Origin: Fonticula alba ATCC 38817
Taxonomy: Eukaryota; Protista; Nucleariida
DNA: 42,623 nucleotides
Assembly: GCA_000388065.2 (NCBI GenBank)
Contig: KB932203.1
Direction: 5' to 3' (one strand)
Part shown: positions 4,571 through 28,200 of the stretch, piece after piece
How the letters are laid out: every line of letters begins with the position of its first letter
How positions within the stretch are numbered: position 1 is the first letter of the stretch
The notes under the pieces: generated by a model
Seen by the model: the letters and a program-made list of their open reading frames with translations, nothing else
Databases searched by the model: none
What the model was told of the DNA's origin: nothing
Position numbers and translations under genes: made by a program

Positions 4571-7500
4571 ATGGCAGGGTCATCTTTCCTGCTGGTCCTG
4601 GCGCTGCTCGTGTCGGTACTCTTGATCACCCTCTCCCAGGGGCAGGACATCTTCCTCCATGTGGCTCCGTATCCCCTCACGCTGGCCGACAGCCCGGTGG
4701 CCTTCTCTACCGACCCCCGAGGCCACTCGACCGCCATCATCCGCTCGAGCCCCACCCTCATTCAATGTTTCCTGCAGTACACCTCCTTCGAGCACCAGGC
4801 CGAAGTCCGCTGGGGCACCTTCTTCGGGAGGGTGGGGCCCGGGTTTTCCAATCCGGACCCGGCGAATGTGAGCCCCTTCCCGCCGCTGTTCCTGCCCCTG
4901 GCGGCCCGTATGGCTCCCCTGATAGTGGACCACACCCGGTCCATGGTGCGGTTCTTCACCTCGCCGTCGAAGTACCCCCTTCCGGCTTCGGAAACGGAAA
5001 TTCTGGCCGGCGTGGCCACCTCCCAGGATGAGGCGTTGCTCCTGGGGCTGACCGGGGACCCTGCCCTGTCGCGCTCGACATACCTGGCCCGGCTCACCGG
5101 CACCGGGCTTGTCAAAATCAATGGCCTCGACATCCAGTTTGAGGGTCCGGTGCTGGCGATGCCAGGGACCGGGGCCTCCTTCTTCATGGGGTCCGGGCGG
5201 CGGGTCACCTTTGCGGCCACGGTGGCGTCGGTGAATGTTTATCAAACCTGGCTCGACCTGCCGGCCAACATCCTGGCCATGACCGTCACGCGGACCCTGT
5301 CGACGGACAGCACCTGCGCCCAGGCGTCCGATGTGGTGGCCCTTCTGGACACCGGATCGATCTATGTGGTGCCCTGTTTCGGGATCGGGCAAGTGGGCGA
5401 CCCGGTGGACACCCACTTGCCGGCCGGGCTCAACCGGTCCGGGGCCCGGTTCCTGGCTGCTCCGGCCAATGCCATTTTGAACGAGGTGGCGCCCTTCTAT
5501 GTGGTGCTGCCGAATGTGTCCAATCCGCTGGACCGGCTCTGGCAGGGGTCCCTCCATCAGGGCATCTTCTCCTGGCGCCGGGTGGTCCTGCCGTCGGCGG
5601 TGGTCGGCCTGGAGGACTTGCAGCTGATTCGCCTGCGCACGGACGCCATCACCCCCGGCTCCTGGACCCTGGTGTCTGGAAAGAGGGCCCTTTTTGACTC
5701 GGCGGCCTTCCGGTGCGAGGAGGACCGCACCATCCTGTGCGATGGCCCGGGCTCGCCGTCCCTCTCGTCGGCCGGGTGGACATGTGGCATTGGTCATGTC
5801 CAGTCGCCCTTCGTCACGCCGGGGCATCTGTGCGCCGGGTGCCAAGATGGCTGGTACCTGGACCGGCCGGCCGGTGCGTGTGCCACCGGTCACTCTCCAT
5901 CTGCTGCTTGGGTGCCTCTGGCGGCCGTCTCGGCCCGCTGACATGGTATTTTTCTGCGTGTTTCCCCCCCAATGACAGGCGAGGCGCCCTTCACGCAGCC
6001 GGGCCACAAGTGTCTCCCCTGCCCGCAGGAGCATTGTAACATTTGCGAGGGCCAGCACTGCCTCCTCTGTTCGGGCAGCTACCTGCTGCAACCGGGCAAT
6101 GGCGAGACTTTGTGTGTGTCTTCCTGCTCGGAGGGGTTCCTTCCGGTGGGTGGGACTTGCCAGCCGGGCGGCCAGGCGTTGCCGGTTTTCCAGCTGTCCC
6201 CTCCCGCCCCGTATCAGATTCCTGGACTGGATCCCGGTGATCGGATTACCGCCATGGGCCACACATGGCTGGCGGTAGACCCGGACACCGGGCAGATGGT
6301 CGTCCCGGCGGCCGCGGCCCCCGGCCCCGGCCCGCGGGTGCTCATCTTTACCGAGCAGGACAAGAGCTACATCATGTCGGCCGGTGACATTGACCGGCCG
6401 GTTGAGTCGGCCCTGCGGGAGATTCCCCTGTCGGGAGTATCGCCGTCCGGTTACACCATCGACTTTGCCGAACTTGGGCCCTTCCTCTATGCGGGGCGGG
6501 TCCGGTATTTGCTGGCTTTCTGCCGGTCAGATGGGCAGGGGCCAATGCTGACCTTGCAATGCTCGGGCCCGGCGCCATGCATGCCGACCGAGCAATTTGT
6601 CCAATTGCACCCTTCCCCCAGTTGCCATGCGATCCACCGCCTGTCGCCGGAGAGTATCCTGTTTCGGAGCTACCTCACCCAGCTGAACATCCTTTGGTTT
6701 GATCCTCTTTCCCAGGGGTTGAAGGAGTCCCTGCTCGTGGGCGGCGCTGTGGTGAGCCTGTCGGTTGGTCCGGCGGCCGGTGGCCGGGCCCACACTTCCC
6801 CCGGTGACTGGATTGTGTGGAGTGATTCGACTCCCGGGGTGACGGCCCTCCCGGTGGCGATGGTGGGCTCGGACCCGCGCGCCATGCCGCTGTCGGGGCT
6901 CTTTGTGTCTGGGCTGTCGGCCGCCGAGGGGTCCTTCGTGCCGGTGCTCCTGCCTCGGGGTGCGGCGGCTCCGGCGGAGCTGGTCTTCGTCCGGGGCTCC
7001 GGCACCGAGTGGCTGGCTGTCCGGACCCCGCGGGACATGCTGCCGGGTGGCCGGTCCAATGGGCTACTCTCCAGAGAGCAAGTCCTTGGAACGTTCCCCC
7101 GGGCCTTGGCCTCGCCGGGCCACCGGGCACCGGATGTCCTCTTCCAGGGGGTGGAGCTGCCGGCCGTGAACCCGGCCTTCCCGAGTGCGCTGCTCGTGCA
7201 GGCGCGTACCTTTGTGGGCATCTCGCTGATGTACTGCCCCGGCGGGGCCACCGGGCCGTGTACCCTGCAGCCGGCCATGTTCGTGTCGATCCCACTGGCC
7301 AACCAGCTTCCGGACGATGAGCCGCTGTGGTTGCCGGCCATGGTGTCCCTGCCGGGTGACTTGGGCGACCCGGTGCAAGCTGCCGCCCTGTCGGCAGGCG
7401 CACAGAATTTGGTGACCTTCTCGCGCTACGGCGGGCCGATGGTCCTGCCATTGAAGATGACCTGTCCGCCCGGGCACCATGGGGTCCAGTGTGCTCCGTG

Positions 7501-10500
7501 TGATGCGCGATGTGCCGAGTGTGATGGGCCCGGTGGGGAGTCCTGCACCGCCTGCCCGAGTGGCAGTTGGCTTCTTGATGGGGCATGTGTCGGGGTCTGC
7601 CCGGACGGCATGTGGCCAAAGGCGGACACTCATACGTGCGAGCCCTGTCCGGCTGGCTGTGGCATGTGCACCTCCGGGGACACATGTACCAGCTGTCTTG
7701 GCCAGCGGTTCCTGGCTGGGGATGGATCATGCGGCCAGTGTGACGGGGCATGTGCCGAGTGTGTGGATGCCATGAGCTGTACGGTGTGCCGGCCGGGGTT
7801 GGTCTTCATGGGGGCCGATGCCGCGGTGCCGTCGCTGTGCACCTCCTCCTGCCCGCCGGGCATGTATGTCGGGCCCGAGCGATGTGCCGAGTGTGACCCG
7901 AGCTGTGACCTGTGCACCGGAGGGGCCATGGAGTGCGAGGCATGTGCCGAGGGCTTCCGGTGGCTGGCCCGGCCGCCCCCGGGCGGCACCGGGGCCTGTG
8001 TCCCCTGCGACGTGGGGTGTGCCCTGTGCACGGAGGATGCCTGCTTTGCCTGTGAACCGCTGCGGTTCCTGCAGGCGGATGGCCGGTGCGTGGCCGACTG
8101 CCCGGCCGGGTTCTGGCCCAATGGCGAGTCCTGCCAGCCGTGCGATGTGTCCTGTGCGACGTGTGTCGGCGGCCAGGCGGACCAGTGTGATGGCTGCGCC
8201 GCCGGGTTCGACCTCCTCGAGACTGGCCCCGGGGTGGGGGCCTGTGCTTCCGGCTGCCCGGAGGGCCAGTACCACGCTGGTGGCGGGGCTTGCCTGCCGT
8301 GCGATGCGGCATGCGCCGCATGCAATGGCCCGACCAACCGCGACTGCTGGCGATGCCAGGGCGGCGTGCTGCAGGACGGCGAGTGTGTGCAGGACTGCGC
8401 CACCGGGCACACTGCCGCCGCCGGCCGGTGCCTGCCCTGCCACCCGTCGTGTGGCGAGTGCACCGGCGTCCGGAGCACCGAGTGCGGCACCTGCACCGGG
8501 GACTTGCTGGCCCTGCCGGCCGGCCAGTCGCCGATGCGTTGTATGCCGGCCTGCCCGGCGGGGTACAGCACCACGGCCGCCGGGTGTGCCTCGTGCAGTG
8601 CCCACTGCGTCAGCTGCCCGGGGGCCACTGCGAGCTGCGCGCTCTGCGAGCGGGGCTGGCTGCTGGACAGTCCGGGATGTGTGGCCTCCTGCCCGAGCGG
8701 CACCACGGAGCTGGGGAACTTGTGCTCCACCTGCCATGCCGTGTGTGCCACTTGCTATGGCCCGGGGCCGGACCACTGCCTGACTTGCGATCCGCTGGCC
8801 CCCTTCCTGGTGGGCAGCCAGTGCCATGGGGCCTGCCCGGCGGGCACCTTCCAACATGGGGAAGCCTGTCTGCCGTGCCACTCCACTTGTGGCCAGTGCA
8901 CCGGAGCCGGGGTCGACCAGTGCGTCGGCTGCTCCGGGGCCCGGGCGCTTTACCAGGGATCCTGCCTGACCGCCTGCCCGGGGGGCTTCTTTGCCGAGGA
9001 CAATGTCTGTGTCGAGTGCGAGGCTTCCTGCGGCACTTGCATCGAGGCCGGGACTTGTGCCACTTGCCGGGGGCAGGACATGCTCATGCCGGGGGGGACT
9101 TGCGTGTCGGTGTGTCCGGCAGGCTGGCATGGGTGCGCGGCTTTCGGCGAGTGTCGGGCCTGTCCGAGCCGCTGCACGGGATGCGCCTCGGCCGGGGCGG
9201 CCTGCGCCGGGGTGTGCACGGCCTGCGAGGCGGGCTTCGTCCTCTCCTCGGGCGCATGTGTGCGGGAGTGCCCGGCCGGGGAGTTCGCCCCGCCGGGGGC
9301 GAGCGCCTGCCAGCCCTGTGACAGTGCCTGCGCGAGCTGCCTCAATTTGGGGGATTTCTGCACGCGCTGTCCCGAGGGGCTTGTCCTGCGGCCGGTCGAG
9401 GGGGCCTGTGTGACGACGTGCTCCGGGGCCGAGGCCCCGGTGGGCGGCGTGTGCCTGAGCTGCCTTGCCGGATGCGAGCGGTGCACGCCGGCCGGCGACC
9501 AGCCCGGATGCACGGTCACCGATGGCGGCATCCTCGATTGCCCGGACATCGGCACTTGCGATCGTTGCGCCTCCGGCCGATATCTCCTGGGCCGGACGGC
9601 CTGCGTGGAGACCTGCCCGAATGGGTACCATGTGGATGAGGAGGGCCCGTCGGCCGGCTGCATGCCCTGCCACGCGAGCTGCGCGGCTTCCTGCCTCGGC
9701 CCCGGGGTCGAGGGGTGCGTGGACTCGGTCAGGCCGAAGGCCTCGCAGGTGGGCCTGGCCGTCGGCCTGGCCGTGGGCCTGCTGCTCCTGCTGCTCCTGT
9801 TGATCTTGCTGGTGGTTTGCCTTGTCCAGCGGCGGGAGAGGACCCCGGCCCCGGGCAAGGCCACCGACGATGAAGATGCCACCATGATGAACACCATCGT
9901 GGAGCTGGCCCTGCCCGGGGCCATCCTGGTCGATGTGGAGATGGACTTCCGGCCGGTCGATGAAGGGCACCTTGGCATGGGGGCCCAGGCGTCGGTGTTT
10001 GCCGCGCAGGCGGTCGGGGCCGGGACCCTCGCTCGGCTGGGCTGCCCGGAGGTGGTTGCCATCAAGCGCATGGCGGTCGAATCCATGGAGCCAGTTCGCC
10101 ATTCCCTCTTCCAGAATGAGGTCGCTCTGATGTGGCTGCTGCGTGACTGCCCGGGCGTCGTGCGGCTTTTCGGGTACAGCGAGGCCCCGGCGGCCGTGGT
10201 CATGGAGCGCTTCGACTCGGACCTTTCGCTGCTGCTCTGCTCGGAGATCCAGCTGTCGGCGCTGGCGGTGGCCGACATCTGCCACCAATGGGCCGCCGGG
10301 CTGGAGGCCATGCACGCGCACGGGGTGGCCCACTGCGACTTGAAGCCGGCCAATGTGTTTGTCAGTGCGACGCCGGCCGGGGGCTGGCGCGTGGCCCTCG
10401 GCGACTTGGGCACATCCCGGAACTTGCATGCCAACCGGCTGTCGGCCCTGCTGAACACCATGCCCGAGCTGAATGCCATGACTGTGCGGTATGCCGCGCC

Positions 10501-10810
10501 GGAAGTGCTGCAGGCCTTCCAAGGCAGGGTCCCCTTGGATTTGGGGCTCTTTTTCCCGGCCGATGTCTTTAGCGCGGGGATCATGCTGCATGGGTGCCTG
10601 ACGCGCGCGAGCCCCTGGCAGGGGCTGGCTTTGGAGGATATCATGGCCGCCGTGCAGGCCGGCGACCGGCCAAGCGTGGACGGCCTCCCCGTGGCAGCCG
10701 CGGACCTGGTTCAGGCTGCCTGGCAGGGGGACCCCCATCGGCGCCCGGTGGCTGCCCTCTTCCGCCAGCGCTGTGCCGGCCTGCTTGTTGCAGCCGGTGG
10801 CCTGGCGTGA
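4571..10810 (+). CDS. Receptor-like TKL-group Ser/Thr protein kinase with furin-like cysteine-rich ectodomain (kinase 1); join(4571..5873,5979..10810), about 2044 aa
   Basis: ATG 4571 opens a signal peptide (MAGSSFLLVLALLVSVLLITLSQG); ATG 4523 is an in-frame alternative. Phase-1 intron 5874-5978 (G|GTGCGT donor, CTGAC branch near 5938-5942, CAG acceptor) joins ORF 3869..5941 to ORF 5972..10810 in frame. Then many CxxCxxxCxxC/CPxG repeats, TM GLAVGLAVGLLLLLLLLILLVVCLV (about 9750-9826), and kinase motifs GMGAQA, VAIK, NEV, HCDLKPAN, DLG, YAAPE, DVFS. Stop is TGA. Confidence 0.92.
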
Positions 10811-13800: not shown

Positions 13801-15419
13801 GGAGGGGGGGGGGGATGCCAGGCAAGTATGAATGCATCGGGGTGGCAGTGCCATGGTGGCCGGGCTTTTTTGCAGGGCGTCGGGCGGGTAAGGGTGTTCG
13901 TCGAGCGGCAACGCGCCCGTGTCGCGGATGGCACGCAGCAACAGCAGCAGCCGTACATGGTAAAGCCAAAAGGCAACGGCGGGAGGAAAGGGAAAGGAGT
14001 GGATGCGTGGCGAGTGTCGGCCGAGCGCGGGGCGGCAGCAGACTGCTCAATAACAACAGAGAAGAGCGAGCCCGGGAGCGCTCGGTGACCGGGGAAGAAG
14101 ACACATCGGCCGGTCGGCACATTGCCTGGGGGGGTCTCGTGCCGGGGAGGTGTCCAAAGGTGACGCATGGTCGAGGCATGTCCCTGGAGGGCACTGCCCC
14201 CTCCAGGATGCGGAGGGGTGTCCTCCTTTGTAGGGCATTCGCTGGGAACAACTGCAGCGTGGTGGACTGCTTGCGAGGCCTTTCTGGGACGGGGGCGTTT
14301 TCGCGCCGGCTACCGAGTGGCTGTCGGCGGGGTGCTCGGCGGGTTTGCGCCCCTCCCTGCCGCCTCGGGATTTCGCCTTCCGCTCGGGCAGACTCCCGGG
14401 CAAGCCGACAGGCAAGACCATCGGCACCCATTCGAGCGGTATCTCGGGCGGCTCGGTGCGGCAGGTGCCCGGCGCCCGGACGGGGCAGGGCAAGACACCG
14501 GCTCCGAAGAGAGACAGATGCCTGGCCGATCCCGCCCTGACAAGCACACGGATCCCGGGCAGCCTCGGACGCAGGTGGCAAAAGGTCCGAGCTTCGGTGG
14601 CTCGCTGATCGTCCCAGCACGGTGGACGAAATGGGGGACCCTCTGAAGCAGAGGAGGGATGTCGGTAAGGTGTGGGGGGCGCGCGCTCGATGACGCTCTC
14701 GCGTGGGCCCCGGCTCCGGGGCCACGTCCAGTGGGCAGGAAGACTACCAGCGGTACGGCTTCCAGAAGGGAATCCGCGTGCATGCTCCTTGGGCCCCTGA
14801 GGGCGAGATGTGGCATTCGGGCATTCTCCCCACCAGCGGCAGCATCACTCAAGGGCGAGAGAGACAGGGAGAGAGAGAGAGAGGCTGGGCTGCCGAGCAA
14901 GTCCACACCTGAAGGTTGTATTATCGTGGAGACAGAGTCCCACGGGCTGGCGCACAGGCCGTTTCGGTCATTTCGCAAGGACACGCAGGGGCGCGCACGC
15001 GCGCGTGGGCCCGCCGAATGCATGAAAAGGACAGCCCGGTGCCGAGGTGCTGCCTTCTCCGGGCCGGGACGGACCCCACATCATGGGCCGCATGCGGCCG
15101 CACGGAGGGCCGTCAGGGTCATCTGCTGAGCGCCGGGGCCCGGGCTGCTGCTGGCTGGCGGCCACCTTGCGCGGCACTTGCCAGGCCTTTGTGGAGGGGG
15201 ATCGGCGAGGGAGCACAAGCGAAGAGCGGGGATGGGGGGACTATGGTGCTGGAGTGTCTTTTTTTTTGTTTGCCGGCTGTTGAGGACCTCCAGCCCGCGC
15301 TGGGACAGACACCCGGGGCTTGGGGCGGCCATATGCCGCGGAAAGAGCCGGGGGAGGGGGCCTCCACGGACAGGGTAGCGGGGGCGTGCGATCAATCGGA
15401 CGCGCTTTCGCGGGAGCGA

Positions 15420-18400
15420 TCAGGGGGCCGCCAGAGCATCCAGCGCGCCGGCCAGTTCGGCCTGCGCTGCGGCGTCCGCGGAGAAGAAGCCCATCATGGA
15501 GTTCAGAGCCTGTGCAAGCTGGCCGTTGAGAGCCGGGGGGTTGCTTCCGGCTGAAGGGCAACGATCGGGATGGAGCCCCGGGGCGGGGTGGAGGCCATGG
15601 GGGCAGGTGTCAGCAAGACACCTCGCACGGGCAGGGGCAGCCCAGTGAATGGTGCAGGGCGAGGAGGCAGACGCACCATTGTAGGCCAGGCACGCCATGC
15701 CGCGCAAGACATATCCCAGGGCCTCGGCGGTGATGGTGGGTCCAGTGGCCAAGGCCACCAGGTGCTGGGCCAGCAGCCCATTCAGTCGCCGGGAGTTGGC
15801 TGCTGCTGCAGGCGAGAGCGGAGTCGGGGTGAGCGAAGGCACCAGGGGCAGGGCGGCCGCGCAGGACCGAGCAGGAGGCAAGTCGCACCGTTGTCAGCGA
15901 GCAGCATCAGTCCGAAGGCCCGGCGCGAGTGGAAGTGCGGGCTGTGGTGGGCCTGCTGCAGGCTGAGAGCCTGGAGGAGGGCCATATTGCTGCGAGGGCA
16001 ATTCCGCGTGGCTTGGGGGATGCATTTCCGCAGGGGGGGGGGGGGGGGGGGATTAGCGACGGTGCCCGGGGGCGGGGTGGGGGCGCGGGGAAAAGGAACA
16101 CATGCAAGGCCGCCCGGGCCAAACGGTGGAGAGGAGGAGCAACGCACCGGCGCCGCAGAGATTGGCCAAGCCTGTGATGGCGCGCTGCTGGACTTGGACG
16201 TCATCCGGTGCACGGGCGATTGCCAGGGAAAGCTGCCGCAAGAGCATGGCATTGAGGGACCGTCGGTTGGCGAGGTCTAGCACGGTGGGTGTGCGTCCGT
16301 AAGCGTGTGTCTGTGTGTGAGGGGGAGAGAGAGAGAGAGAGGGGGGGGGGGGTGACAGCGCGCGGTCGGGCGAGCGGCGACCCGGGGATCCGGAGGGGGG
16401 CGAAGTTGGGCGGAGAGGGCATGGCACGCACAGCTGAGGGTCAAATGCGCGAAGACGGTTGTCCGAAGCCGGTGCAAGTGCTCTCCGGCGGGGGGCCGGT
16501 GTGCGAGTCGCAAGAGCAGCTGCACGATCATGCGGTTCATACGCGCGCTGTTGCCTCGCGCTAGAGCGGGCCGCGGGTGGAGGCGGGGTGGGCAACGGGG
16601 GAGTGGTCAGACTTCAACAGACCGAGGGTCCAAGGGGGGGGGGAGTGTCCGGCGGTCACACCATTCCAAGCCAACTGGCCAAGGCCGAACAGGATGAGGC
16701 TGGGCACTTGCTCACTGTCGGCGTGGTGCCGGGCCGCGGCCAGCATTTGCCGCAGGAGGATCCAATTGACCCGGGGGCTATTTTGACGCGCTGCGCGCAG
16801 GCCACGCGCATGCACACAAGCACCCGCCGAATGGCGGAGAGGACAATGGGGATGTGTGAGTAAGGCCAAGCGATGGCGGCGGGAAGGCAGGGCAGAACGA
16901 ACAGCTTCGCGCCAGGCCGACAGCACATCGAAGGACCTGGACCTCGATGGAGGGCACCCCGGCCATGCGTCGGCCGAGGTCCAGGGAGGACTGAAGCAAC
17001 ATGCCGCGCACCTGGCGGCTGTTGGGCAGTGCTGAGCTCGTGTGTGTGTGTGTGTTTGTGTATGTATGTGTGTGCGTGTGTGTGTGTGTGTGCTCGCGAG
17101 TGAGAGAGCGGAAGAGGGAGAGAGTATGAGTGGAGGGTGGAGGAGGGTGAGCGGCGCGCTAGGCAACTGATGCGGAGGGGATCGAGAGGGGCGAAGGGGC
17201 AAAGCATGCGGCGCCGTGTGGACGGGCGCATGTGCGGCACGCCAGCAGGCGCGCACAGGCGTGAGCGTGGGCGCGGCGATGTGCCCATGCAAAAGGATGC
17301 ACAGATGCACGGCTGCATGGACGTCGGGACGCAGGGGAGGGCAGAGGGCATCGACCGATCGGGCCCATGGATGCATGGGCACGCAGGCACGCACCGGAGC
17401 CGGACAAGTTGCCAAGAACGAATGCCACGGATTCCTGCAGCTCCAAGTCGCCCGGGGCGAGACCCTTGACTCGAAGGATTGCACGAAGCAGCGCCCCATT
17501 GAGGTTTGGAGGGCGCTGGTCGGCTGGCAGAGCGGGCGAGCGGGAGAGGGAGGAGCGGAAGCCGCATGAGCGAGGAAGGGGCGCCTGGCAGGGTGGAGGA
17601 AGAAAAGGAAAGCAAGCCCGGGCCCAGGGCCGCGGGGGAAACACGCACCGGCGAGGGACACCAGGTGGCGCAGGGCGCGGCCGGTGTGGCGCGCGACCTC
17701 GACCATGTCGAGGCCCGGGCCCCGCTGCGGGCTGGCGTCGAGCACCGCAGAGAGGATGACAAGCAGGTCCCACACGAAGTCCATGGGATCTTGGTTGCGG
17801 GGCGGGCCTGCTCTCGGGCTGTGAGTATAGTCCAGGCGGGGGGGGGGGGGGGGGGGGGGGGGCCTGGCCAGCAATTTCCTCACCCAAGCCGAGCCCGCCT
17901 GTATGTTCCATTGGCCAGGGTGGAGTGGGGGGGGGGGGGGGGGGGGGGGGGTCTTGTGCGCGGAGGGGAGCGAGTGGGGCCTTGTGCGCGCGGCGGAAAC
18001 GCACCGCCCGATGCCACGGCCGACAGGCCGAGAGCAAGCCATGCACAGTCACCGGGCTGGAGATCGCCCCATCGGACGACGGCCTCGGCACATTCAAGCA
18101 TGCCCTGCCAGAAGCCAAGGCAGAAGAGCTCTGTGGATCCGGGACCGAGGGGGCGGGGGGGATTCCACAAAAGTGAGGGGCATGCCCGGGAGCGGGGCCG
18201 TGTAGATGTCTGGAGTCGGCGCACCATCCTGGGCAAGATGCGCCAGGGCAAAGGCCACCGGGCTGCTGAGATGCTTGGCGGACTGCGATCGCTGGGCCAG
18301 CGTTTGCATGCTTCTCAGGATGCCCATATTGAAGGGCAGCGGATTGGAGCGCACTGGCAAGGTGGGCCCGGGGGTCAGCATCATGGATTGCGCCCTGGTG

Positions 18401-19051
18401 GGAAGGGGAGAGAGGGGGGGGGGGGGGCAGCGCTCGCCCGGTTGGGAGGATGAGCCTGTTTGCGCCGATCACTGACATGCTAGGCTGCGTGCGTGGGGCA
18501 CCGAGGGCGGATGTGCACATTCGTGCGGGCGCATGCTCGCGCATGCGCATACATATGCATGCATGCATTTTCGCGAACACGCCGACCCGGATCAGGAGCG
18601 CACCGTTGAGGGAAAGCCCAGCCAGTGCCCGCATCGCGGGGGCCGCGACGTCGGCGTCATCCGACAGGACGAGGCCTCGGGCATGTTCGAGCACCGCCCT
18701 GTTGACCTCTTGGTCGGCCTCCTGGGCTGTGTGGAGCACGAGTCGCGTCCTTGGTCAGTATCAGTGTCTGTCGGCCGGCCGAGAGCCGAGGGGCGGCAAG
18801 GCCAGTGTCGGTGGCTGTGCCAGGGGATGGGCGAAGGGGAAGGGCCACCCCCTCGACATACATCGGTGCCCCAGGGCGGCCAGCGCGCGGGACAGGTTCC
18901 TCTCGGCCGCCGGCTTGCCGGCCAGACGCGCAAGATGAGGGAGCAGTTCCTGGTCAGGGGGTATGAGGCCGGCTTCCGCCGCGTCGGCCAGGCTCCGGGC
19001 TGCTGCTGCAATGTCACCGCCAAGGTCTTGCAAGGAATTGGGAGGGCCCAT
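15420..19051 (-). CDS. Armadillo-like (ARM) helical-repeat protein, 13 exons, about 578 aa; exons 19051-18862, 18726-18604, 18353-18225, 18130-18005, 17789-17649, 17523-17395, 17031-16903, 16790-16662, 16560-16432, 16276-16148, 16011-15889, 15805-15677, 15550-15420
   Basis: Twelve GT-AG introns read by hand (donors GTATGT, GTGCGC x2, GTGCGT x6, GTTCGT, GTGTGA, GTGCGA) splice into one stop-free 1737-nt frame. Start is GCCATGG after a pyrimidine-rich leader; stop is TGA at 15420. Repeats such as MLLRQLSLAIARAPDDVQVQQRAITGLANLC and ALLRAILRVKGLAPGDLELQESVAFVLGNLS match the ARM helix2-helix3 pattern. The exon-5 acceptor could alternatively be 17807, and an additional upstream exon is not excluded. 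Confidence 0.85.
17041..17092. repeat. Imperfect (TG)n microsatellite in ARM-gene intron 6
   Basis: tgtgtgtgtgtgtgtttgtgtatgtatgtgtgtgcgtgtgtgtgtgtgtgtg. Confidence 0.9.
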
Positions 19052-21479
19052 GGCGAGATCGAGAGAGGGGAGAGATGATGACGATGGATGAAGCGAGGGG
19101 ATCGAGAGGGGAAGGCGCGGGGAGGGATCCTCCCGAAGCACATGGAGCAAGTCCCCTTGAGGGTGTCTCATGGCGGGGAGGGGAGGCGTGGCTGGCAGAT
19201 CCGCGGACCGCGGCTGGCGGCCGGGGAGAAGCCGCGGGCTTGGGCCGAGATCGTGCTCGGTGGTGGCGCCCGAAGAGCACCCCCGGCTCGGAACCTCCGC
19301 CATGGATGGGCCTACTCGGAGCCGCACACGGTGAGCAAGTCATCGAGCACAACATGCTTGGCTTGACGAGGGAAGGACAGCGCTCCCGGGGGGGGGGGGN
19401 NNNNNNNNNGGGGGGGGGGGGGGGGGGGGCGAGCGTGTGTCTGCCCAGCGGAGCCCACGCCGGCGGCAGCCTTCGGAGGCGTGTTGTAGGGCGTGGGACG
19501 CATCCCCCGACGCCGGAGCCGAGGGCTTCGGCCGCCGGAGACAAGCGCCAGCGCCAATGGCATATCTACCAACGCACCGGCCGGCTTGTCCCCCGTGTTC
19601 GGCCCCGTGCGCAGTTTCCGAGGCTGGGACGCATGCAGGTGGCCTCATCTCCCCTGGATGGCAGTCCCCAGGCAGGGGGCATGTGAGGAGACACCGATCA
19701 CCGGGCTGCGCCGGTCGAGTCGCTCGGGCAAAACTTGGCCAGGGAGGGAGTCACCCGCGAATGGGCCGATCCCGAGTGGCAGCAGTCTTCGGGGTGCTTC
19801 TTCCGTCCTTCAGCCCCGGAGCCCGGCAGCGGGCCACGTCCGGGGAGCCTCCCGCGACTGAGGCCCCTTTCGGCTGCATGTTGGGGGGGGGGGGCACAGG
19901 GAAAGAAGGGCCGGTCTCATCGGCGGGTGCCATCCGCTGGAGCCCCTCTCTCTCCCCTGTGTGAGCTGACTGTGCCCGGGAGAGAGGGGCGCGAGACTCC
20001 CGGCGACGAGGGGCGAGCAGGCTCAAGGCCGCAGGGTCGCCGGTGCAGACGACCGGCACATCGGCGGGACAGCTATGGCCCGAGATCAAACCCAGGGATC
20101 GGGGACCCTGGCTGGGGCAAAGCAAGACGCAAGTCAGTGGCGGTGCACATATCTCCCAGCCTCTTGCTCCCCCTCTCGAAGGAGGGTGGACATCGAACAG
20201 GCAGCGACACCGTGGCATCTGGCATCCGGCGGCCGACCACGGTCGTCCGTGGGGCCGGTGGACGCGTCGGGTGTTGGCCTCCCGCGCCCCGCGCGCGCCT
20301 GGACACACGGGGAGGGGGCCATTGCAAGAGAGAGCATGGGCGCCCCATACGTTGGTACATGAGGCCGGCGGGACACGTGTTGCCCGTACTTTTATTTGCG
20401 CATCGTGGCGCTCGCATTCTGGGCGGCCGAGTGGCGTTCTCTTTCCCGGGCGTGGCCGTTGGGGGGACCGGCATGCGGCACGCCGGGGCAAGCCAGCTCA
20501 AACACCACATCAAAATGGGGCCGAAAAATCGTGTCTCTAAATATTTGGAAATATACCCCGCGCATGTGTGGCGAAAGGGCACCCCCTCGCATGGCATCTA
20601 CATTGGCACCAGAATCGGGGGTCTCGTTGTGTGCGACGAGTCAACCGTGCAACCTGCTTGAGCCAACTATCACCGCGGGGGATCTGGCCGGATGAGGATC
20701 GCCGGAGGGAAAACAAAGGGCCATCAAGGCGCACCGGCGATGGTGCTGCTCTGAACGCTTCCTTGCCAGCCGGCTCCCCTTGCAAGGGGGCGGGGGCGGC
20801 CTCCCTGCGAGCTTTCTTGAGCCGCGGTGGCCTTCGCGGCTGGCCGGTGCCTTCTCCTTCTTCCTCTCGGCCGAAAAATGCCTGCGTGATCACACAATGC
20901 TCCTGCCCGTCGGATAGCACCACCTCCGGGCGGCGTATCGCCCTCCAAGCGGATGTGGGTTTCGTTTGCGAGGCTCGAGGTTTTTTTTCCCACGCAACCG
21001 ACTCGGCGTCTGTTGCGGAGCCCACCGGCTGGTCGGTTCTCAAAGGGGGNNNNNNNNNNGCGGAGCCCACCGGCTGGTCGGTTCTCAAAGGGGGCATAGC
21101 TGGTGTTTTGGTTGTGGGTCTTTTTGGGTGGGTTTGGGGTTGTTGGGGGGGGGGGGGGGGGGGGGGGGGGGGCATCGACACCCAGTGCCCTGAGACATTG
21201 GCCGGGAGGCGCAGACCGACCACAAGGGGGAAGGCGAGAGGGCAGACACCGGGCGGGGCTCGGTAGTTGTGATTCGTGGCACCTGCACAATGCTGAGTTC
21301 CGCACGGAAAGCCTAAAACAACGCACCGACAGTCGAACCACTCTGGTTGATTCGGAGTGATTACGGAGGCCGGCAGCGAGCGAAGAATGCCACACGCGCG
21401 CGGGCAGCCTGGTTCTGTGCTGTGCGTGACCCCCCTGCCGGGGCAGGGGTGCGGGCCGGGCGGCAGACGCCTTGAGGCT

Positions 21480-22286: not shown

Positions 22287-25200
22287 ATGGCGGTGACCGC
22301 GCGCCGCGTGCCCGGGCCAGGTCCCGCGCCGGAGGCCCGGTCATCCTCCCTTCGCATGTGCCTGGTGCTGATGCTGGTGGGAGCCCTGCTGCAAGGGATC
22401 CGGCCACTGGGCGGCTGGGCCGAGGCCGCCATTGCCGGTGATTACGATGCCGACATGCCGCCGCTCCTGGCCATGGCATCCCCCTACGGCTCGGTGTCCG
22501 TCGCCGGGCTCTCCTTCGAGCGCCTGTACCCGACCGAGCCGCCGGTGCAGATTCATCTCCAGAATACCGGGTGCCAGTTTCACGGGCCCGCTATGCAGGA
22601 GGATCTTTTCTTTGATCGGCGTCTGGGCAGCTTCTTCTCCAAGACCCCCTCCGGGAAGGTTGTCCTGGCCGACATCCCGCTCGAGGCAAGCCCATCGATG
22701 CTGGCGATGGCGGCCCCGAGCGGGGGGGAGCCACTCTTTGCCTGGCTGTCCGGGAAGGTGATGGGCTTCTCCTGGCACGCCGACACCATTCAGCACACCT
22801 TCGCCGAGGGGCAGGATCCGAGTTTACTGGCGGCGTCGGCCACCGGGCCAAGCGCCGGCCGGGCCCTGGTCAAGCACGGCAACACCATTAGCTTGATGGT
22901 CCTCGTTCCGGGCGAGATCCAGAAGAGCGGCATGGCCATCGACACCACCGGGGCCGTGGCCGGGCTGCCGGGGCACTTCTTCCTGGCCACGGCCACCGGG
23001 TGGACGTGGTTATTGCCCAACGGTACATTGATCCCGACTCCCCTCAATGAGGCGGTCCTCCGGCTGGCAGCCACGCGGTACCTGACAGCCGATCCCGACC
23101 GGGTGGATTTGGTCGTGGTCACGGCCTCTCGGCTGTTGATCTACCTCGGACTGGGGGATGATGGTACTTGGCAGTCTGTCCTCACCAACTTCCAACCGAC
23201 CTCGCGGAACAATCTCAACCTGTCGCTGGTGCCACGCGTGTCGCTCGCTACACTTCCCACCGGGTACCTGTATCTGCATCAGGGAACGAGTGCGCTGTGG
23301 CGGGTTGTGTACCACCCGACGCGCTTGTTGTGGCAGCGTGTCCTCGGACCCTCGTCCATGACCCTGACGGGGATGGGGCTGGTGCCGGTCCATGGGGCCA
23401 GCGCGCCGGGACAGCCCCCGGAGCAGTGGCGACTGGCGGTCGGCATGCGAACCTTCACCCCGGGCGAGCTGCTCGGCTGTGCCGGGGCCGACCCCTCGAT
23501 CGCGTGTCACCCGACCGAAGCCAAGTGGGAGTGTGCCCCGGGGCGAGTGTACTCGCCTTTGACCTCGTCGGCGGAGCTGTGCGCCGGCTGCGCCGACGGC
23601 TATTACCGGGCGCCACTACCGAAGCAGCAATGTGCGTCCGGACCGTGTGCCTCTTGCTCGCGGGCTTGATGATCGCTTTTGCCGGGGAGGCTTCCTCCTC
23701 CCTTTCTCCCCTTCCTTGCCTCTCTCGCTCCTTTTCTCGCTTTCTCCCTGCCTTGCCCTCCGGCTCTGGCCCTCGCTCGGCCTCCTTTGCACGCGCATGC
23801 ACTCACACACATGTGGCTAACTGCCTTGGACATGGTAATCCTCCAGACCGCTGTTTGCCCTGCCCCGGGGCCGGATGCCGGGCCTGCGTGGCCGGGGTGT
23901 GTGTTGCCTGCGCCGAGGGGTATTTGCTGGAAAGGTCGGCCCATGGCGGCGGGCCGCCGGTCACTCGGTGCGTGAGTGACTGCTCACCGGGCTTCCAGGC
24001 CGAGGGAGCGGTGTGCCGACCGGCGACCATGCCCCCGGTGGCGGTGGCCTTCACGAAGCTGCCCAGCCTGGCCAATGGCCAGACTATCCTGTCGCTGACC
24101 CGGAGCCGGGCCTACGCGCAGGGCGATCAGCTGTACGTGTCGAATGCGTCGCTGGAGGCCCCGGAGCCGGGGGCCCTGTTGGTGATGCTGAGTGACCGTT
24201 CGCTGGGCTTCCTGGACATGGACCAGCTGCTGGCCAGCCCGACAAGCGGCCCAGTGTCTGTGACGGGGATTTCCGGGTCCTTCTTTCCCGTGAGCTCTTC
24301 GACCTCCCTGCTGGAACTCGGACCGGTCGTGCTTCCGCAGGGGGAGGTGCGACTGGCACTGGTGAGCATGCACGGGGGCCAGATCCTCGCTGTGGTATTC
24401 CAATGTGTCCTCTCGGGCTCCGGGCCCGCGGACGAGTGCCAACTGCAGGTGCAATCGACCAGCGGGCCGGCGAACATCTCGGGGACCAACCCGCCGCGGC
24501 GACTGTCGCCGACTGTCCTGGCAGTGGGCAATCAGCATTTCGAGCTCAATGCCGCGGGCAGCTTGGTCACGGTCACCGACCCGGACACCTCTTCCTCGGA
24601 CATTCCCAGCATGGGGACCCATGTGGATCGGCTTACCGGGCTGCCGGCTTCATGGGTCTATCGGATGAGTGGTTCCCAGTTGATTGCCCAGCCGTGGGCC
24701 CTCCTGCGGGTGGGGGACAGCCGGTTGAAGACCGCTGACGGGCTGCTGATCAAGCCCATCAACCCGCTTCCGGCGGAGGGCATGTCTCCGGCTTCGGGTT
24801 CCACGTGTCTTTGGGGTTGCCCGGAGGCCGGTCGGCCGGCCGGGGCAAGTGCCCCCGATGCCGAGGGCCATGCCGATGGCGGCCGCACGGTCCGCAGCCG
24901 AGCCAGCGGGACCGGGAGCTTCTCCTTCGAGCCGACCGGCTCATGGCGGCCGGTGTACCTGGACGCCGGGGCGGCCCGGCGCTCGGGGCCCCTCCCCCCG
25001 GGGGATGTCCTGGTGACTGGGGTCCTCTCGCATGGGGGGACCTGGCACTGGGGCGTGGTGAACTACTCGCTGGGCCTGGAGCCCCAGGGCCGGACCCGAG
25101 CCATTGCCGGGACGTCGGAGCTGCTGGCCCCCGTGGGTCCGCTGGCGGGTGTCACCGGAAATGCGCCCTTCCACGCGGTGGCCCTTCGGCTTGCCGGGCT

Positions 25201-28200
25201 GCCGGAGTACCCCAGCGCCTTGGTGGTGCTGCATCCGGCCTTCTTGGGGGTCATGCTGCTGCACTGCCCCGTCGGGGAGCTGGCCTGTCGGCCAGGGCCA
25301 AGGCATATATCCCCCTACCCGGCCGACTTGGAACAGACTGGCCACGAGTCGCTGGGAGTGGAGCAGCTGGTTGGGCAGCCATCGCGGCTGCCCTCCGGCC
25401 GGCCGGCCAGCATCAACCTGTTGCTGGTGTATCGCGGCTTGCCCGCCACGAGTTTCCTGGTGCAAATGGCCATCGACAGCTGCCCGTCTGGCACGTATGG
25501 GCCTCTGTGCCTGGCTTGCCATGGGTCCTGTCAGACGTGCACCGGCCCGGACGCGGGGGACTGTGTGCTGCCCAAGTGCACGGCCTTCCTGCCCTCGGCC
25601 CCGGGGGTCTGCCTGTCGGCCTGTCCGGCGGGGCTGGTTGCCGATGCGACCGGGGCCTGCCTGTGTCATGGTAGCTGTGCGGCATGTGCGAGCGCGGACG
25701 GCGTGGGGCCCTTCATATGCACGGCATGCCCCTCGGGGATGGCCGTGGCCCCGGCCGGCGAGCAGCAAGCCGGCCAGTGCGTGTCCTGCCATGCGTCCTG
25801 TCGGGAGTGCTCCGCCCCCGGCAGCGCCGGGGCTTGCACCGGCTGCTTGGGCTCGGGGATGTTCCTGCAGCCGGGTGGCATGTGTTCCGGGGCCGTGGAC
25901 TGCCCGGCTGGGACCTGGCCCGATGGATCGATGGACGAGTGTGTCGCCTGTCCGACTGGGTGCTCGGCCTGCCGAGACGCCGTCAAGTGCTCCGCCTGTG
26001 AGGCTGGCTTCCTGTTTGAAAGTGTGATGCAGGTGTGTCTGCCCTGTGCGCCGGAATGCACTGCCTGCGTCGGGGTCCCGGACAACTGCCTGGCCTGTCG
26101 AACGGGGTACCGGTGGGAAGACGGGGCACCGCCAACCGGAACGCCGCCGGCGGGCAAGTGCATCTTTTGTGGCCCCTCGTGCGCCTCCTGCCAGGATGAT
26201 GGCCAGTGCCTGGCATGCACCAACGGAAAGCTCCTGACGCCGGCCGGCACATGTACGGCCACATGCCCGAGTGGCACGGGCCCTGTCGCCGGGGGGGCCG
26301 TCTGCGGGCCGTGCCACGACACGTGCAGTCTCTGCACGATGGCCGGCGTGGCTGATTCCTGCGTGGCCTGTGTGCAGGGGGGTCTTCTTCTCCGGCACAC
26401 TGAGGGGGCCAGCTGTGTGGAAAATTGCCCGAACAAGTAGTGGCCGGTTGACGGGCAGTGCGTCACCTGCGAGGCCGGGCTGCATTTGATGCCCGAGGCG
26501 GGTGGCATGAGCTGTGTGGAAGCCTGCCCGGAGGGGCACTGGTCGTCGGGCGGGTTGTGCACCGTCTGCGGGGATGGCTGCCAGGCCTGTTCGGAGGCTT
26601 CGAAATGTGACCGATGCCAGGAGCAGCACTTCGCGGATGGCAATGGGGCATGTCGCCAGTGCGGTGACATGTGCGCCTCTTGCAGTGGCCCCCAGACGTG
26701 CGATGCCTGCCTGCCGGGGGGGTACTTCCTGAGCCCGGATGCTCAGGTGGCGTCGCCCTGTGTGGGGGTGTGCCCGGAGGGGCGGTTTGCCGATGCGGTG
26801 TCCGGCCGGTGTGCCTCCTGCCCGACCGAGTGCGGAACGTGTGTCAGCGCGGTCGAGTGCGATTCCTGTGCCCCGGGTCACGGGTGGATTCCCCGGTCGG
26901 CGGTCGAGTGCTCGGCGTGCCCGGAAAAGTGCGACTCCTGTGCCCGGAGCACCGCCTGTGACACTTGCGCGGAGGGGTTCTTCGTGACATCGACCGGCGG
27001 ATGTGCGGCCACCTGCCCGGCGGGGGCCTTCGCCGATGTGGCCACCGGCCGGTGTGCTCCGTGCGATGCGACCTGCTCCAGGTGTGAGGGTGCCTCGGCT
27101 TGCAGCACGTGCGAGGAGCCACTGGTCTTCCTGGGTGCCATTGGGCAGTCCCTGTGCGTGGGGGTGTGCCCGGCCGGGCTGTTCGCCGAGGCCGGCCGGT
27201 GCATGGAGTGCCATGCGTCGTGCGATCTGTGCACCGGGGCCGCGAACCGGTGCCAGGCGTGTGCGCCGGGGTTCCGCTGGGCCGACGGTGCGCCCGGGGC
27301 CGGGGGCAGCGGCATGTGCACCGCCTGCCCGGACGGCTGTCGAGCATGCGACCGGGACATTTGCATCGACTGCGAGGAGGAGCTCTTCCTCACTCACCAG
27401 GGGGCTTGCGTGGCGGAGTGCCCGGCGGGGACCTTCGGCGATGGCCAGTCCATGACATGCCAGCCGTGTGCGCTGGAATGCGACACCTGCGCGGGCGACG
27501 GGGCCGGCCGGTGCACCGCCTGTTCGCCGGGGCTGGATGCCGTCCCGGCGGAGGGGCCATGGGTGACATGCGTGCCGGCCTGCGACCCGGGGAAGTACCG
27601 GGACCCGGTGGGACAGCAGTGCGTCTCGTGCGACGCATCGTGCCTGACATGCAACGGCCCGTCCGATGGCGACTGCTGGCAGTGCCCGGCCAATGGCCAA
27701 GTCCTGCAGGATGGCATGTGTCAAATTGAGTGTGCGCCGGGCTTCGTCCCGGTGGCCGGGCGCTGCCTGCCCTGCCATGCGTCATGCCGGACATGCTCCG
27801 GGCGCCGGCTGGACGAGTGCACCGAATGCCGGGAGGGCTTGCAGGCCCTGCCGGCGGATGGCCCGACCGGCCGGTGCGTCAACGCCTGCCCCCTGGGCAG
27901 CAGCCAAACCGCCTCCGGGTGCGTGGCCTGTGGGGCCCATTGCAGCAGCTGCCCCGACGGGGCGGCCATGTGCTCGGTGTGCGCGCGTGGTTGGCTCCGG
28001 GCGGGGGGGGCATGCATCGAGGCGTGCCCGGGCCGGAGCTTCCCCTTCGGCGGCCAGTGCGACCAGTGCCATGAGTCGTGTTCCACATGCAGCAAGCATG
28101 GCCCGGAGCACTGCCTCGCGTGCGAGGTGGCCACCCGGCTGCTGTATGATGGCCAGTGCATGGTGGCCTGCCCGGTGGGGACCTTCCCGGAGGCGATGTC

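What the first reader, a model, noticed from the sequence alone, without database searches (positions are those of the whole stretch)
15420..19051. Cryptic ARM-repeat gene built one repeat per exon, with all-phase-1 symmetric cassettes
Seen in sequence: all 12 introns are phase 1, and the 11 internal exons measure 123, 129, 126, 141, 129, 129, 129, 129, 129, 123 and 129 nt. Each exon is one repeat, many starting with an NS..(L)N-like motif (ALPNSRQVRG, RQNSPRVNW, RGNSARMNR, AANSRRLNG) and ending in an ALxNL-like helix. Any exon can therefore be skipped, duplicated or swapped without a frameshift. Established: similar repeat-per-exon layouts occur in ankyrin and LRR genes and in the exon-shuffled ROCO-LRR and NB-ARC-TPR candidate immune genes of Ectocarpus. 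Inference: this is a modular ARM scaffold diversified by exon shuffling or combinatorial splicing. I do not know of a described ARM family with this layout. The gene does not appear as a single ORF in the track.
Basis: partly seen in the sequence, partly recalled or inferred. Interest (0 to 1): 0.82.

Follow-up and report, generated by a model that had tools for sequence, protein, structure and literature searches.

The report
One-repeat-per-exon armadillo gene in Fonticula
This is a real, expressed and already annotated gene of the slime-mould-like protist Fonticula alba that encodes a 13-repeat armadillo-type helical scaffold with one repeat per exon; the layout looks like an old, frozen trace of how the gene was built, not a working system for making variants.

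Summary
The observation largely holds. A minus-strand gene at 15420-19051 has 13 coding exons and 12 introns, all phase 1. Transcript contigs confirm 11 of the 12 junctions. One exon size was wrong: exon 5 is 159 nt, not 141, so the product is 584 aa, not 578.

The product is identical to Fonticula alba H696_02541, a "hypothetical protein", so the gene is not cryptic.

Pfam finds nothing. A profile of the 12 exon peptides hits designed armadillo proteins at E=1.6e-15. The AlphaFold2 model (pLDDT 83.6) is an ARM superhelix closest to Vac8, beta-catenin and importin-alpha (TM 0.55-0.68). Every intron falls at the H3/H1 repeat boundary.

The diversification idea is not supported:
- Only one relative turned up among 5.8 billion proteins, the F. 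alba paralog H696_06000 (49% identity).
- That paralog has the same exon sizes and all-phase-1 introns, and 13 of 13 exons match position for position.
- Exons and introns share no DNA similarity with each other.
- The known isoforms differ by intron retention, not exon skipping.

The best reading is a constitutively spliced scaffold whose structure records ancient tandem duplication of an exon-intron module, a known class of repeat gene. The scan had already noted what is probably the paralog on other DNA (s1-065489).

The parts
19052..19124 (-). 5' UTR (approximate start)
   Evidence: Transcript contigs X1 and X3 reach 19119 and 19124.
18862..19051 (-). Exon 1 CDS, 190 nt, residues 1-63 plus 1 nt; ATG at 19051. 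It forms the first three-helix repeat.
   Evidence: Junction 18726|18862 in contigs; model helices 14-27, 34-43 and 47-62.
18604..18726 (-). Exon 2, 123 nt, repeat 2
   Evidence: Junctions 18726|18862 and 18353|18604.
18225..18353 (-). Exon 3, 129 nt, repeat 3
   Evidence: Junctions 18353|18604 and 18130|18225.
18005..18130 (-). Exon 4, 126 nt, repeat 4
   Evidence: Junctions 18130|18225 and 17807|18005 (the latter listed as 17806|18004, cut +1).
17649..17807 (-).
   Evidence: Contig pieces at 17649-17806 and junction 17523|17649; P0001 is identical to this model. The paralog's exon 5 is 144 nt.
17395..17523 (-). Exon 6, 129 nt, repeat 6
   Evidence: Junction 17523|17649; annotation.
17032..17394 (-). 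Intron 6, 363 nt, the longest intron. It holds a (GT)n microsatellite and is retained in one X1 contig.
   Evidence: X1 record 2 covers 17132-17424 unspliced at depth 5.6, against 12-21 for the spliced contigs. Read-through reaches a stop at about 17160.
16903..17031 (-). Exon 7, 129 nt, repeat 7
   Evidence: Junction 16790|16903.
16662..16790 (-). Exon 8, 129 nt, repeat 8
   Evidence: Junctions 16790|16903 and 16560|16662.
16432..16560 (-). Exon 9, 129 nt, repeat 9
   Evidence: Junctions 16560|16662 and 16276|16432.
16148..16276 (-). Exon 10, 129 nt, repeat 10; the most ARM-like sequence (AITGLANLCG)
   Evidence: Junctions 16276|16432 and 16011|16148; 71% DNA identity to the paralog's exon 10.
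15889..16011 (-). Exon 11, 123 nt, repeat 11
   Evidence: Junctions 16011|16148 and 15805|15889.
15677..15805 (-). Exon 12, 129 nt, repeat 12
   Evidence: Junctions 15805|15889 and 15550|15677.
15420..15550 (-). Exon 13 CDS, 131 nt including the TGA stop at 15420-15422, repeat 13
   Evidence: Junction 15550|15677; model.
14877..15419 (-). 3' UTR (approximate end), unspliced
   Evidence: X1 and X3 contigs run on from 15550 to 15000 and about 123 nt further.

Best explanation
The locus is Fonticula alba gene H696_02541. It is a constitutively spliced, expressed gene for a 584-aa soluble protein made only of 13 armadillo-type repeats. Each repeat has a short H1 and two long helices, with a period of about 43 aa.

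Each coding exon encodes exactly one repeat, and every intron interrupts the codon at the H3/H1 boundary in phase 1. The most likely origin (inferred) is repeated tandem duplication of one exon-plus-intron module early in the gene's history. That copies intron position and phase along with the repeat. The array was complete before the gene duplicated into the two paralogs seen today, and it has stayed fixed since.

The protein most likely acts (inferred from the fold only) as a protein- or peptide-binding scaffold of the Vac8 / beta-catenin / importin-alpha type. It may be tethered through its N-terminal Met-Gly.

The symmetric exons make skipping arithmetically possible, but there is no evidence that the organism uses it.
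For: - Gene model: spliced contigs from two samples give 11 of 12 junctions, and the model is identical to public protein P0001 / XP_009494721.1.
- ARM sequence signal: a profile of the 12 exon peptides hits designed armadillo proteins 4rv1, 4hxt and 4rzp with a 42-residue period, E = 1.6e-15. It also hits natural proteins that carry Pfam Arm: P0010, P0011 and P0023.
- ARM fold: the AF2 model has pLDDT 83.6 and pTM 0.71. Foldseek gives Vac8 TM 0.63-0.68, beta-catenin 0.55-0.65 and importin-alpha3 0.66. All ten nearest structure clusters in the ESM Atlas are PF00514 families.
- Intron position: the split codons at residues 243, 286/287, 329, 372, 499 and 542 coincide with the start of the short H1 helices.
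- Frozen array: the paralog H696_06000 has exon sizes 187 | 123, 129, 126, 144, 129 x5, 123, 129, 129 | 107 and 13 phase-1 introns. All 13 window exons best match the same-numbered paralog exon.
- Age: protein identity is 49% and exon DNA identity 55-71%. Introns cannot be aligned, and repeats share no DNA similarity.
- Family size: no other relative in 5.8e9 or 1.8e9 proteins.
- Literature: repeat genes built only of exons equal to the repeat unit, formed by local duplication of intron/exon modules, are a recognised class (Street et al. 2006, as summarised in PMC4585158 and PMC3995336).
Against: - Pfam Arm does not reach any threshold on the protein or on single exons. A full-length profile finds no PDB chain. 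ARM membership therefore rests on the repeat profile and on predicted structure.
- The alignment behind the model has only 2 sequences.
- Module duplication is inferred from regularity. No intron similarity survives to prove it.
- Contigs drop rare variants, so low-level exon skipping cannot be excluded.
- No experiment bears on the function.
Confidence: 0.8

Rival explanations
1. One reading: the symmetric phase-1 exons are cassettes in active use. Exon shuffling between copies or combinatorial splicing would then produce a varied repertoire of ARM scaffolds, as proposed for the LRR-ROCO and NB-ARC-TPR genes of Ectocarpus.
For: - All internal exons are 1-1 symmetric and multiples of 3, so any skip keeps the frame.
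- The paralog has several annotated isoforms.
- Unchecked first-reader notes report many LRR genes with the same layout in this genome.
- A single ARM exon is skipped in human RAP1GDS1 (PMC8242357).
Against: - There are only two family members, collinear 13 of 13, with conserved exon sizes at 49% identity.
- There is no DNA similarity between exons, so no recent duplication or conversion.
- Contigs show only constitutive junctions.
- The paralog's isoforms arise by retention of introns 9, 11 or 13. They give frameshifted or altered tails, not repeat loss.
- There is no signalling domain such as NB-ARC or ROC-COR.
Confidence: 0.06
2. The repeats arose first in an intron-free array. Introns were then inserted independently at the same site of each repeat, because the conserved repeat boundary offers a favoured insertion or proto-splice site.
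For: - The split codon is nearly always Ala or Ser (G|CN, T|CN) in both paralogs, and the donors are very uniform (G|GTGCG). The boundary sequence is therefore similar in every repeat.
- The introns share no similarity with each other.
Against: - Twelve or thirteen independent gains at the same codon position and phase are far less parsimonious than copying one intron.
- The introns do not look like mobile introner copies.
- Neighbouring genes are intron-poor: a 1312-aa product spans only 4154 nt. Background intron gain therefore seems low.
Confidence: 0.08
3. The gene and its paralog are highly diverged Vac8-type adaptors. They would be acylated at the N-terminus and tether organelles or membranes.
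For: - The best global structural matches are fungal Vac8 proteins: TM 0.63-0.68 and rmsd 5.4-6.9 over about 540 residues.
- Both paralogs start with Met-Gly, and the paralog has Cys6. Vac8 is N-myristoylated and palmitoylated (own knowledge).
- Fonticula belongs to the fungal side of the opisthokonts.
Against: - Identity is only 16-18%, and no sequence method links them.
- Beta-catenin, SPAG6 and RAP1GDS1 match almost as well.
- The window protein has Pro at position 3 and no early Cys, which is unfavourable for acylation (own knowledge).
- I did not check whether F. alba also has a canonical Vac8.
Confidence: 0.1

Closest known systems
Armadillo-repeat superhelix proteins (Vac8, beta-catenin/plakoglobin, importin-alpha; Pfam PF00514)
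   Same: - Repeats of about 42-43 residues with a short H1 and longer H2 and H3.
- 12-13 repeats forming one continuous superhelix.
- TM 0.55-0.69 to these proteins.
- The repeat profile matches the H3 consensus of designed ARM proteins in register.
   Different: - No Pfam Arm hit.
- The H3 asparagine of classical ARM grooves is kept in only a few repeats. Instead, two asparagines at repeat positions 3 and 8 are the most conserved.
- There are no flanking domains.
- The family is so far confined to Fonticula alba.
Repeat-protein genes made only of exons equal to the repeat unit (the second class of Street, Rose and Barrick 2006, as summarised in PMC4585158; see also PMC3995336)
   Same: Every exon equals one repeat, intron position and phase are uniform, and the layout is explained by local duplication of intron/exon modules.
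   Different: I found no description of this class for an ARM array in a non-animal opisthokont. Here the array is old and fixed rather than variable.
RAP1GDS1 / SmgGDS (human ARM protein with a cassette ARM exon)
   Same: - One ARM repeat (ARM C) is encoded by one exon, exon 5. Skipping it gives a functional shorter solenoid (PMC8242357).
- It is a structural neighbour of the model, TM 0.66.
   Different: Skipping is shown experimentally for RAP1GDS1. No skipping is seen here. There is no detectable sequence relationship.
Exon-shuffled LRR-ROCO and NB-ARC-TPR genes of Ectocarpus (PMC3341825, PMC11378527)
   Same: One repeat per symmetric exon, so exons can be gained, lost or swapped in frame.
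   Different: The Ectocarpus genes form large families with repeat exons of identical length, variable repeat number, evidence of exchange, and signalling domains. Here there are two collinear genes, diverged repeats and no other domain.

Membership tests
Armadillo repeat (Pfam PF00514 / ARM fold) | Tandem repeats of about 42 residues | tested here: met
   Exon peptides of 40-42 aa (one of 52) align as 12 repeats. The period is 43 residues in the model. Hits to designed ARM proteins recur every 42 residues.
Armadillo repeat (Pfam PF00514 / ARM fold) | Three helices per repeat (short H1, then H2 and H3) stacked into a superhelix | tested here: met
   In the AF2 model (pLDDT 83.6), DSSP marks a 3-residue H1 plus two helices of 15-17 residues in at least 6 repeats, and two long helices in the rest. 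TM is 0.55-0.69 to solved and predicted ARM proteins. This is a prediction, not a solved structure.
Armadillo repeat (Pfam PF00514 / ARM fold) | Sequence match to the Pfam Arm model above its gathering score | tested here: not met
   No Arm hit for P0001 or P0002 at E <= 1, nor for single exons at E <= 10. The link is indirect: the exon profile finds proteins that do carry PF00514.
Vac8 family | Detectable orthology to fungal Vac8, and an N-terminal Gly2 with nearby Cys for acylation | tested here: inconclusive
   It is the best structural neighbour, but no sequence link was found. Gly2 is present. There is no early Cys in the window protein, and Cys6 in the paralog.
Exon-shuffled repeat receptor families (Ectocarpus type) | One repeat per symmetric exon | tested here: met
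   All 12 introns are phase 1 and all internal exons are multiples of 3.
Exon-shuffled repeat receptor families (Ectocarpus type) | Multigene family with variable repeat number or order and signs of recent exon exchange | tested here: not met
   There are two genes only, with 13 of 13 exons in the same order and no DNA similarity between exons.
Exon-shuffled repeat receptor families (Ectocarpus type) | Repeat array attached to a signalling domain (NB-ARC, ROC-COR) | tested here: not met
   No other Pfam domain. The whole model is solenoid.
Repeat genes formed by duplication of exon-intron modules (Street et al. class 2) | All exons correspond to whole repeat units, with uniform intron position and phase | tested here: met

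The most novel reading that the evidence does not exclude
Fonticula alba may have gone through, or may still run, an unusually productive process of tandem exon-module duplication. That process would have built phase-1, one-repeat-per-exon arrays in unrelated repeat families: this ARM pair, plus the many LRR genes that other first readers noted in the same genome. Some of these symmetric exons could also be skipped under conditions not sampled in the 2012 RNA data.
Probability: 0.15. Interest if true: 0.55.

Novelty: new member of a known kind. Interest (0 to 1): 0.3.

Why it matters
It gives an unusually clean example, in a close relative of fungi, of a helical repeat protein whose gene still shows its building plan: 13 repeats, 13 exons, and one intron position and phase.

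It assigns a fold to two "hypothetical proteins" that have no Pfam match.

It also shows that symmetric exons alone do not indicate a diversification system. The same genome seems to hold many LRR genes of the same design, so a genome-wide census could test whether exon-module duplication was a major route to new repeat proteins in this lineage.

Tried and rejected
Sequence alone therefore did not fix the model. Transcripts did.
- Pfam on single exons and on the full protein gave nothing useful. DUF6851 at E = 0.014 is below cutoff.
- A full-length profile against PDB sequences found nothing.
- tblastn of exon peptides against the window found no further copies outside the gene.
- The 2026 poly-A RNA-seq runs X12 and X13 (labelled organism B) gave only poly-G artefact reads and artefact joints (16052|18405, 18427|16032, 15272|16032). 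They say nothing about expression.
- I checked whether the ARM gene and a flanking receptor kinase were duplicated together. The kinase flanks match only at family level, at many positions, so this is not shown.
- I looked for a relic of the paralog's 14th exon in the window's 3' UTR. The best match was weak and composition-biased (27 aa, E = 0.03), so this is inconclusive.
- Introner-type mobile introns were rejected, because the introns are not similar to each other.
- The bacterial-looking STAND NTPases with 41-aa repeats (P0003, P0005, P0006 and others) resemble the repeat pattern only. I treated them as remote or convergent.
- Literature searches for a described ARM gene with one repeat per exon, or for intron phase in Fonticula, found nothing direct.
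Full report
**Gene model**

The region is about 68% G+C and full of spurious ORFs.

Spliced transcript contigs from two samples of a 2012 data set (X1, X3) settled it. On the minus strand they join these pairs, each with CT..AC ends on the plus strand:
- 18862|18726
- 18604|18353
- 18225|18130
- 18005|17807
- 17649|17523
- 16903|16790
- 16662|16560
- 16432|16276
- 16148|16011
- 15889|15805
- 15677|15550

The twelfth junction (17395|17031) lies beside a (GT)n tract that the tool skipped.

The resulting CDS has 1755 nt in 13 exons: 190 | 123, 129, 126, 159, 129, 129, 129, 129, 129, 123, 129 | 131. All 12 introns are phase 1. Exon 5 is 159 nt, not 141, and the product is 584 aa, not 578.

The 584-aa product is letter for letter a public protein: Fonticula alba H696_02541, "hypothetical protein", XP_009494721.1. 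It sits near the end of a 3.6-Mb scaffold. The gene is therefore expressed and annotated, not cryptic.

**Repeat and fold**

The 12 peptides of exons 2-13 align as one repeat, with consensus xxNxxxxNxxLLxxL...LxxLA. Their similarity is weak but above shuffles: mean z is 2.2, and 30% of pairs exceed z = 3.

Pfam sees nothing in single exons or in the whole protein. A profile of the 12 peptides does hit three designed armadillo proteins (4rv1, 4hxt, 4rzp). The match is to their H3 helix, recurs every 42 residues, and reaches E = 1.6e-15.

Against 1.8 billion representative proteins, the same profile finds the protein itself, one paralog, and then remote hits. Three of those remote hits carry bona fide Pfam Arm repeats: P0010, P0011 and P0023.

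AlphaFold2 on the two-sequence alignment gives a confident all-helical solenoid, with pLDDT 83.6 and pTM 0.71. Structure searches agree on the fold:
- Foldseek places it with fungal Vac8 (TM 0.63-0.68), beta-catenin (0.55-0.65) and importin-alpha3 (0.66), and also with ARMC8 and SPAG6.
- The ESM Atlas holds an independent model (pTM 0.78). Its ten nearest structure clusters all belong to PF00514 families.

The codons split by the introns are residues 64, 105, 148, 190, 243, 286, 329, 372, 415, 458, 499 and 542. Wherever DSSP marks the short H1 helix (243-245, 287-289, 329-331, 372-374, 499-501, 542-544), the intron sits at its first residue, which is the classical ARM repeat boundary. Exon 1 also folds as a three-helix repeat. 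The result is 13 exons and 13 repeats.

**Test of the diversification idea**

Only one clear relative exists among 5.8 billion proteins: F. alba H696_06000, 49% identical and on another scaffold.

I rebuilt its exon chain from the annotated products. Variant 3 has exons 187 | 123, 129, 126, 144, 129, 129, 129, 129, 129, 123, 129, 129 | 107 and 13 introns, all phase 1. Apart from a 15-nt difference inside exon 5 and an extra short terminal exon, the two structures are the same.

Further results point the same way:
- Each of the 13 window exons scores best against the same-numbered paralog exon. The whole array therefore existed before the gene duplication and has not gained, lost or reordered a repeat since.
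- That duplication is old. Exon DNA identity is 55-71% and introns cannot be aligned.
- Within the gene, exons share no DNA similarity beyond 9-13-nt chance matches.
- The introns do not resemble each other, so they are not mobile introner copies.
- The paralog's five annotated isoforms differ by retention of introns 9, 11 or 13, which gives altered or truncated tails. None drops a repeat.
- In the window gene, the only variant seen is an unspliced contig over intron 6, which would end in a premature stop.
- No skipping junction appears in the contigs. Contigs can miss rare forms, however.
- None of the other profile hits I looked up comes from F. alba.

**Interpretation**

The uniform intron position and phase are best explained by tandem duplication of one exon-intron module. 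This is a recognised route for a class of repeat-protein genes (Street et al. 2006, as summarised in PMC4585158; PMC3995336). The neighbouring genes are intron-poor: a 1312-aa product spans only 4154 nt. That makes twelve independent intron gains at one site unlikely.

The protein has no other domain, signal peptide or membrane segment. The fold points to a binding scaffold. Similarity to Vac8 and the Met-Gly start hint at a membrane-tethered adaptor, but that is speculation.

An ARM repeat carried by one skippable exon is already known from human RAP1GDS1 (PMC8242357). The Ectocarpus exon-shuffling families differ in being large, variable and linked to signalling domains (PMC3341825).

**Context from the scan**

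An earlier first-reader note (s1-065489, 3585 letters) has the same length as the paralog's variant-3 CDS span (L001 6001-9585), so it probably describes the paralog. I matched it by length only.

Other unchecked notes report several LRR genes with phase-1, one-repeat exons in this genome. If they hold, the layout is a genome-wide habit rather than a special property of this gene.

**Verdict**

This is a real and tidy example of a known kind of gene architecture, and it gives a new fold assignment to two orphan proteins. The proposed diversification mechanism is not supported. Interest is modest.

Noticed in passing
window 16027-16052, 17835-17870, 17925-17952, 18410-18428, 19389-19430: Long poly-G runs on the plus strand, which are poly-C in the pre-mRNA. 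They sit inside introns 10, 4 and 2 and upstream of the gene. One of them holds a 10-N assembly gap (19401-19410). They attract artefact reads and false joints from unrelated RNA-seq runs.
   Followed up: partly
window 17033-17131 and 16303-16365: Intron 6 holds a (GT)n microsatellite and intron 9 a (GA)n/poly-G tract. Intron 6 is the only intron seen unspliced in a transcript contig.
   Followed up: partly
window 22287-29051 (+) and about 5400-10800 (+); L001 1-2546: Both ARM paralogs lie near large receptor-type kinases with Furin-like / GF_recep_IV / VSP-like cysteine repeats and Pkinase domains. The flanks match only at family level, so a joint duplication is not shown.
   Followed up: partly
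L001 9390-9585: The paralog has a 13th phase-1 intron exactly where the window gene has its stop codon. Its 107-nt last exon starts another N..LN half repeat. A relic of this exon in the window's 3' UTR could not be shown.
   Followed up: partly
same genome, other pieces (notes s1-065649, s1-065751, s1-065818, s1-066007, s1-066045, s1-066192, s1-065457): First-reader notes describe several LRR genes, and one 80-aa-repeat gene, with one repeat per symmetric exon, mostly phase 1. This suggests a genome-wide pattern in Fonticula alba.
   Followed up: no
P0003, P0005, P0006, P0009, P0017, P0021 (metagenomic proteins): STAND/AAA_16 NTPases and repeat-only proteins carry very regular 41-residue repeats (…AGTAERADSLLQELRDLAAQTPDDAEVRR…). 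These resemble the Fonticula repeat pattern and are only weakly called TPR_14 by Pfam.
   Followed up: partly
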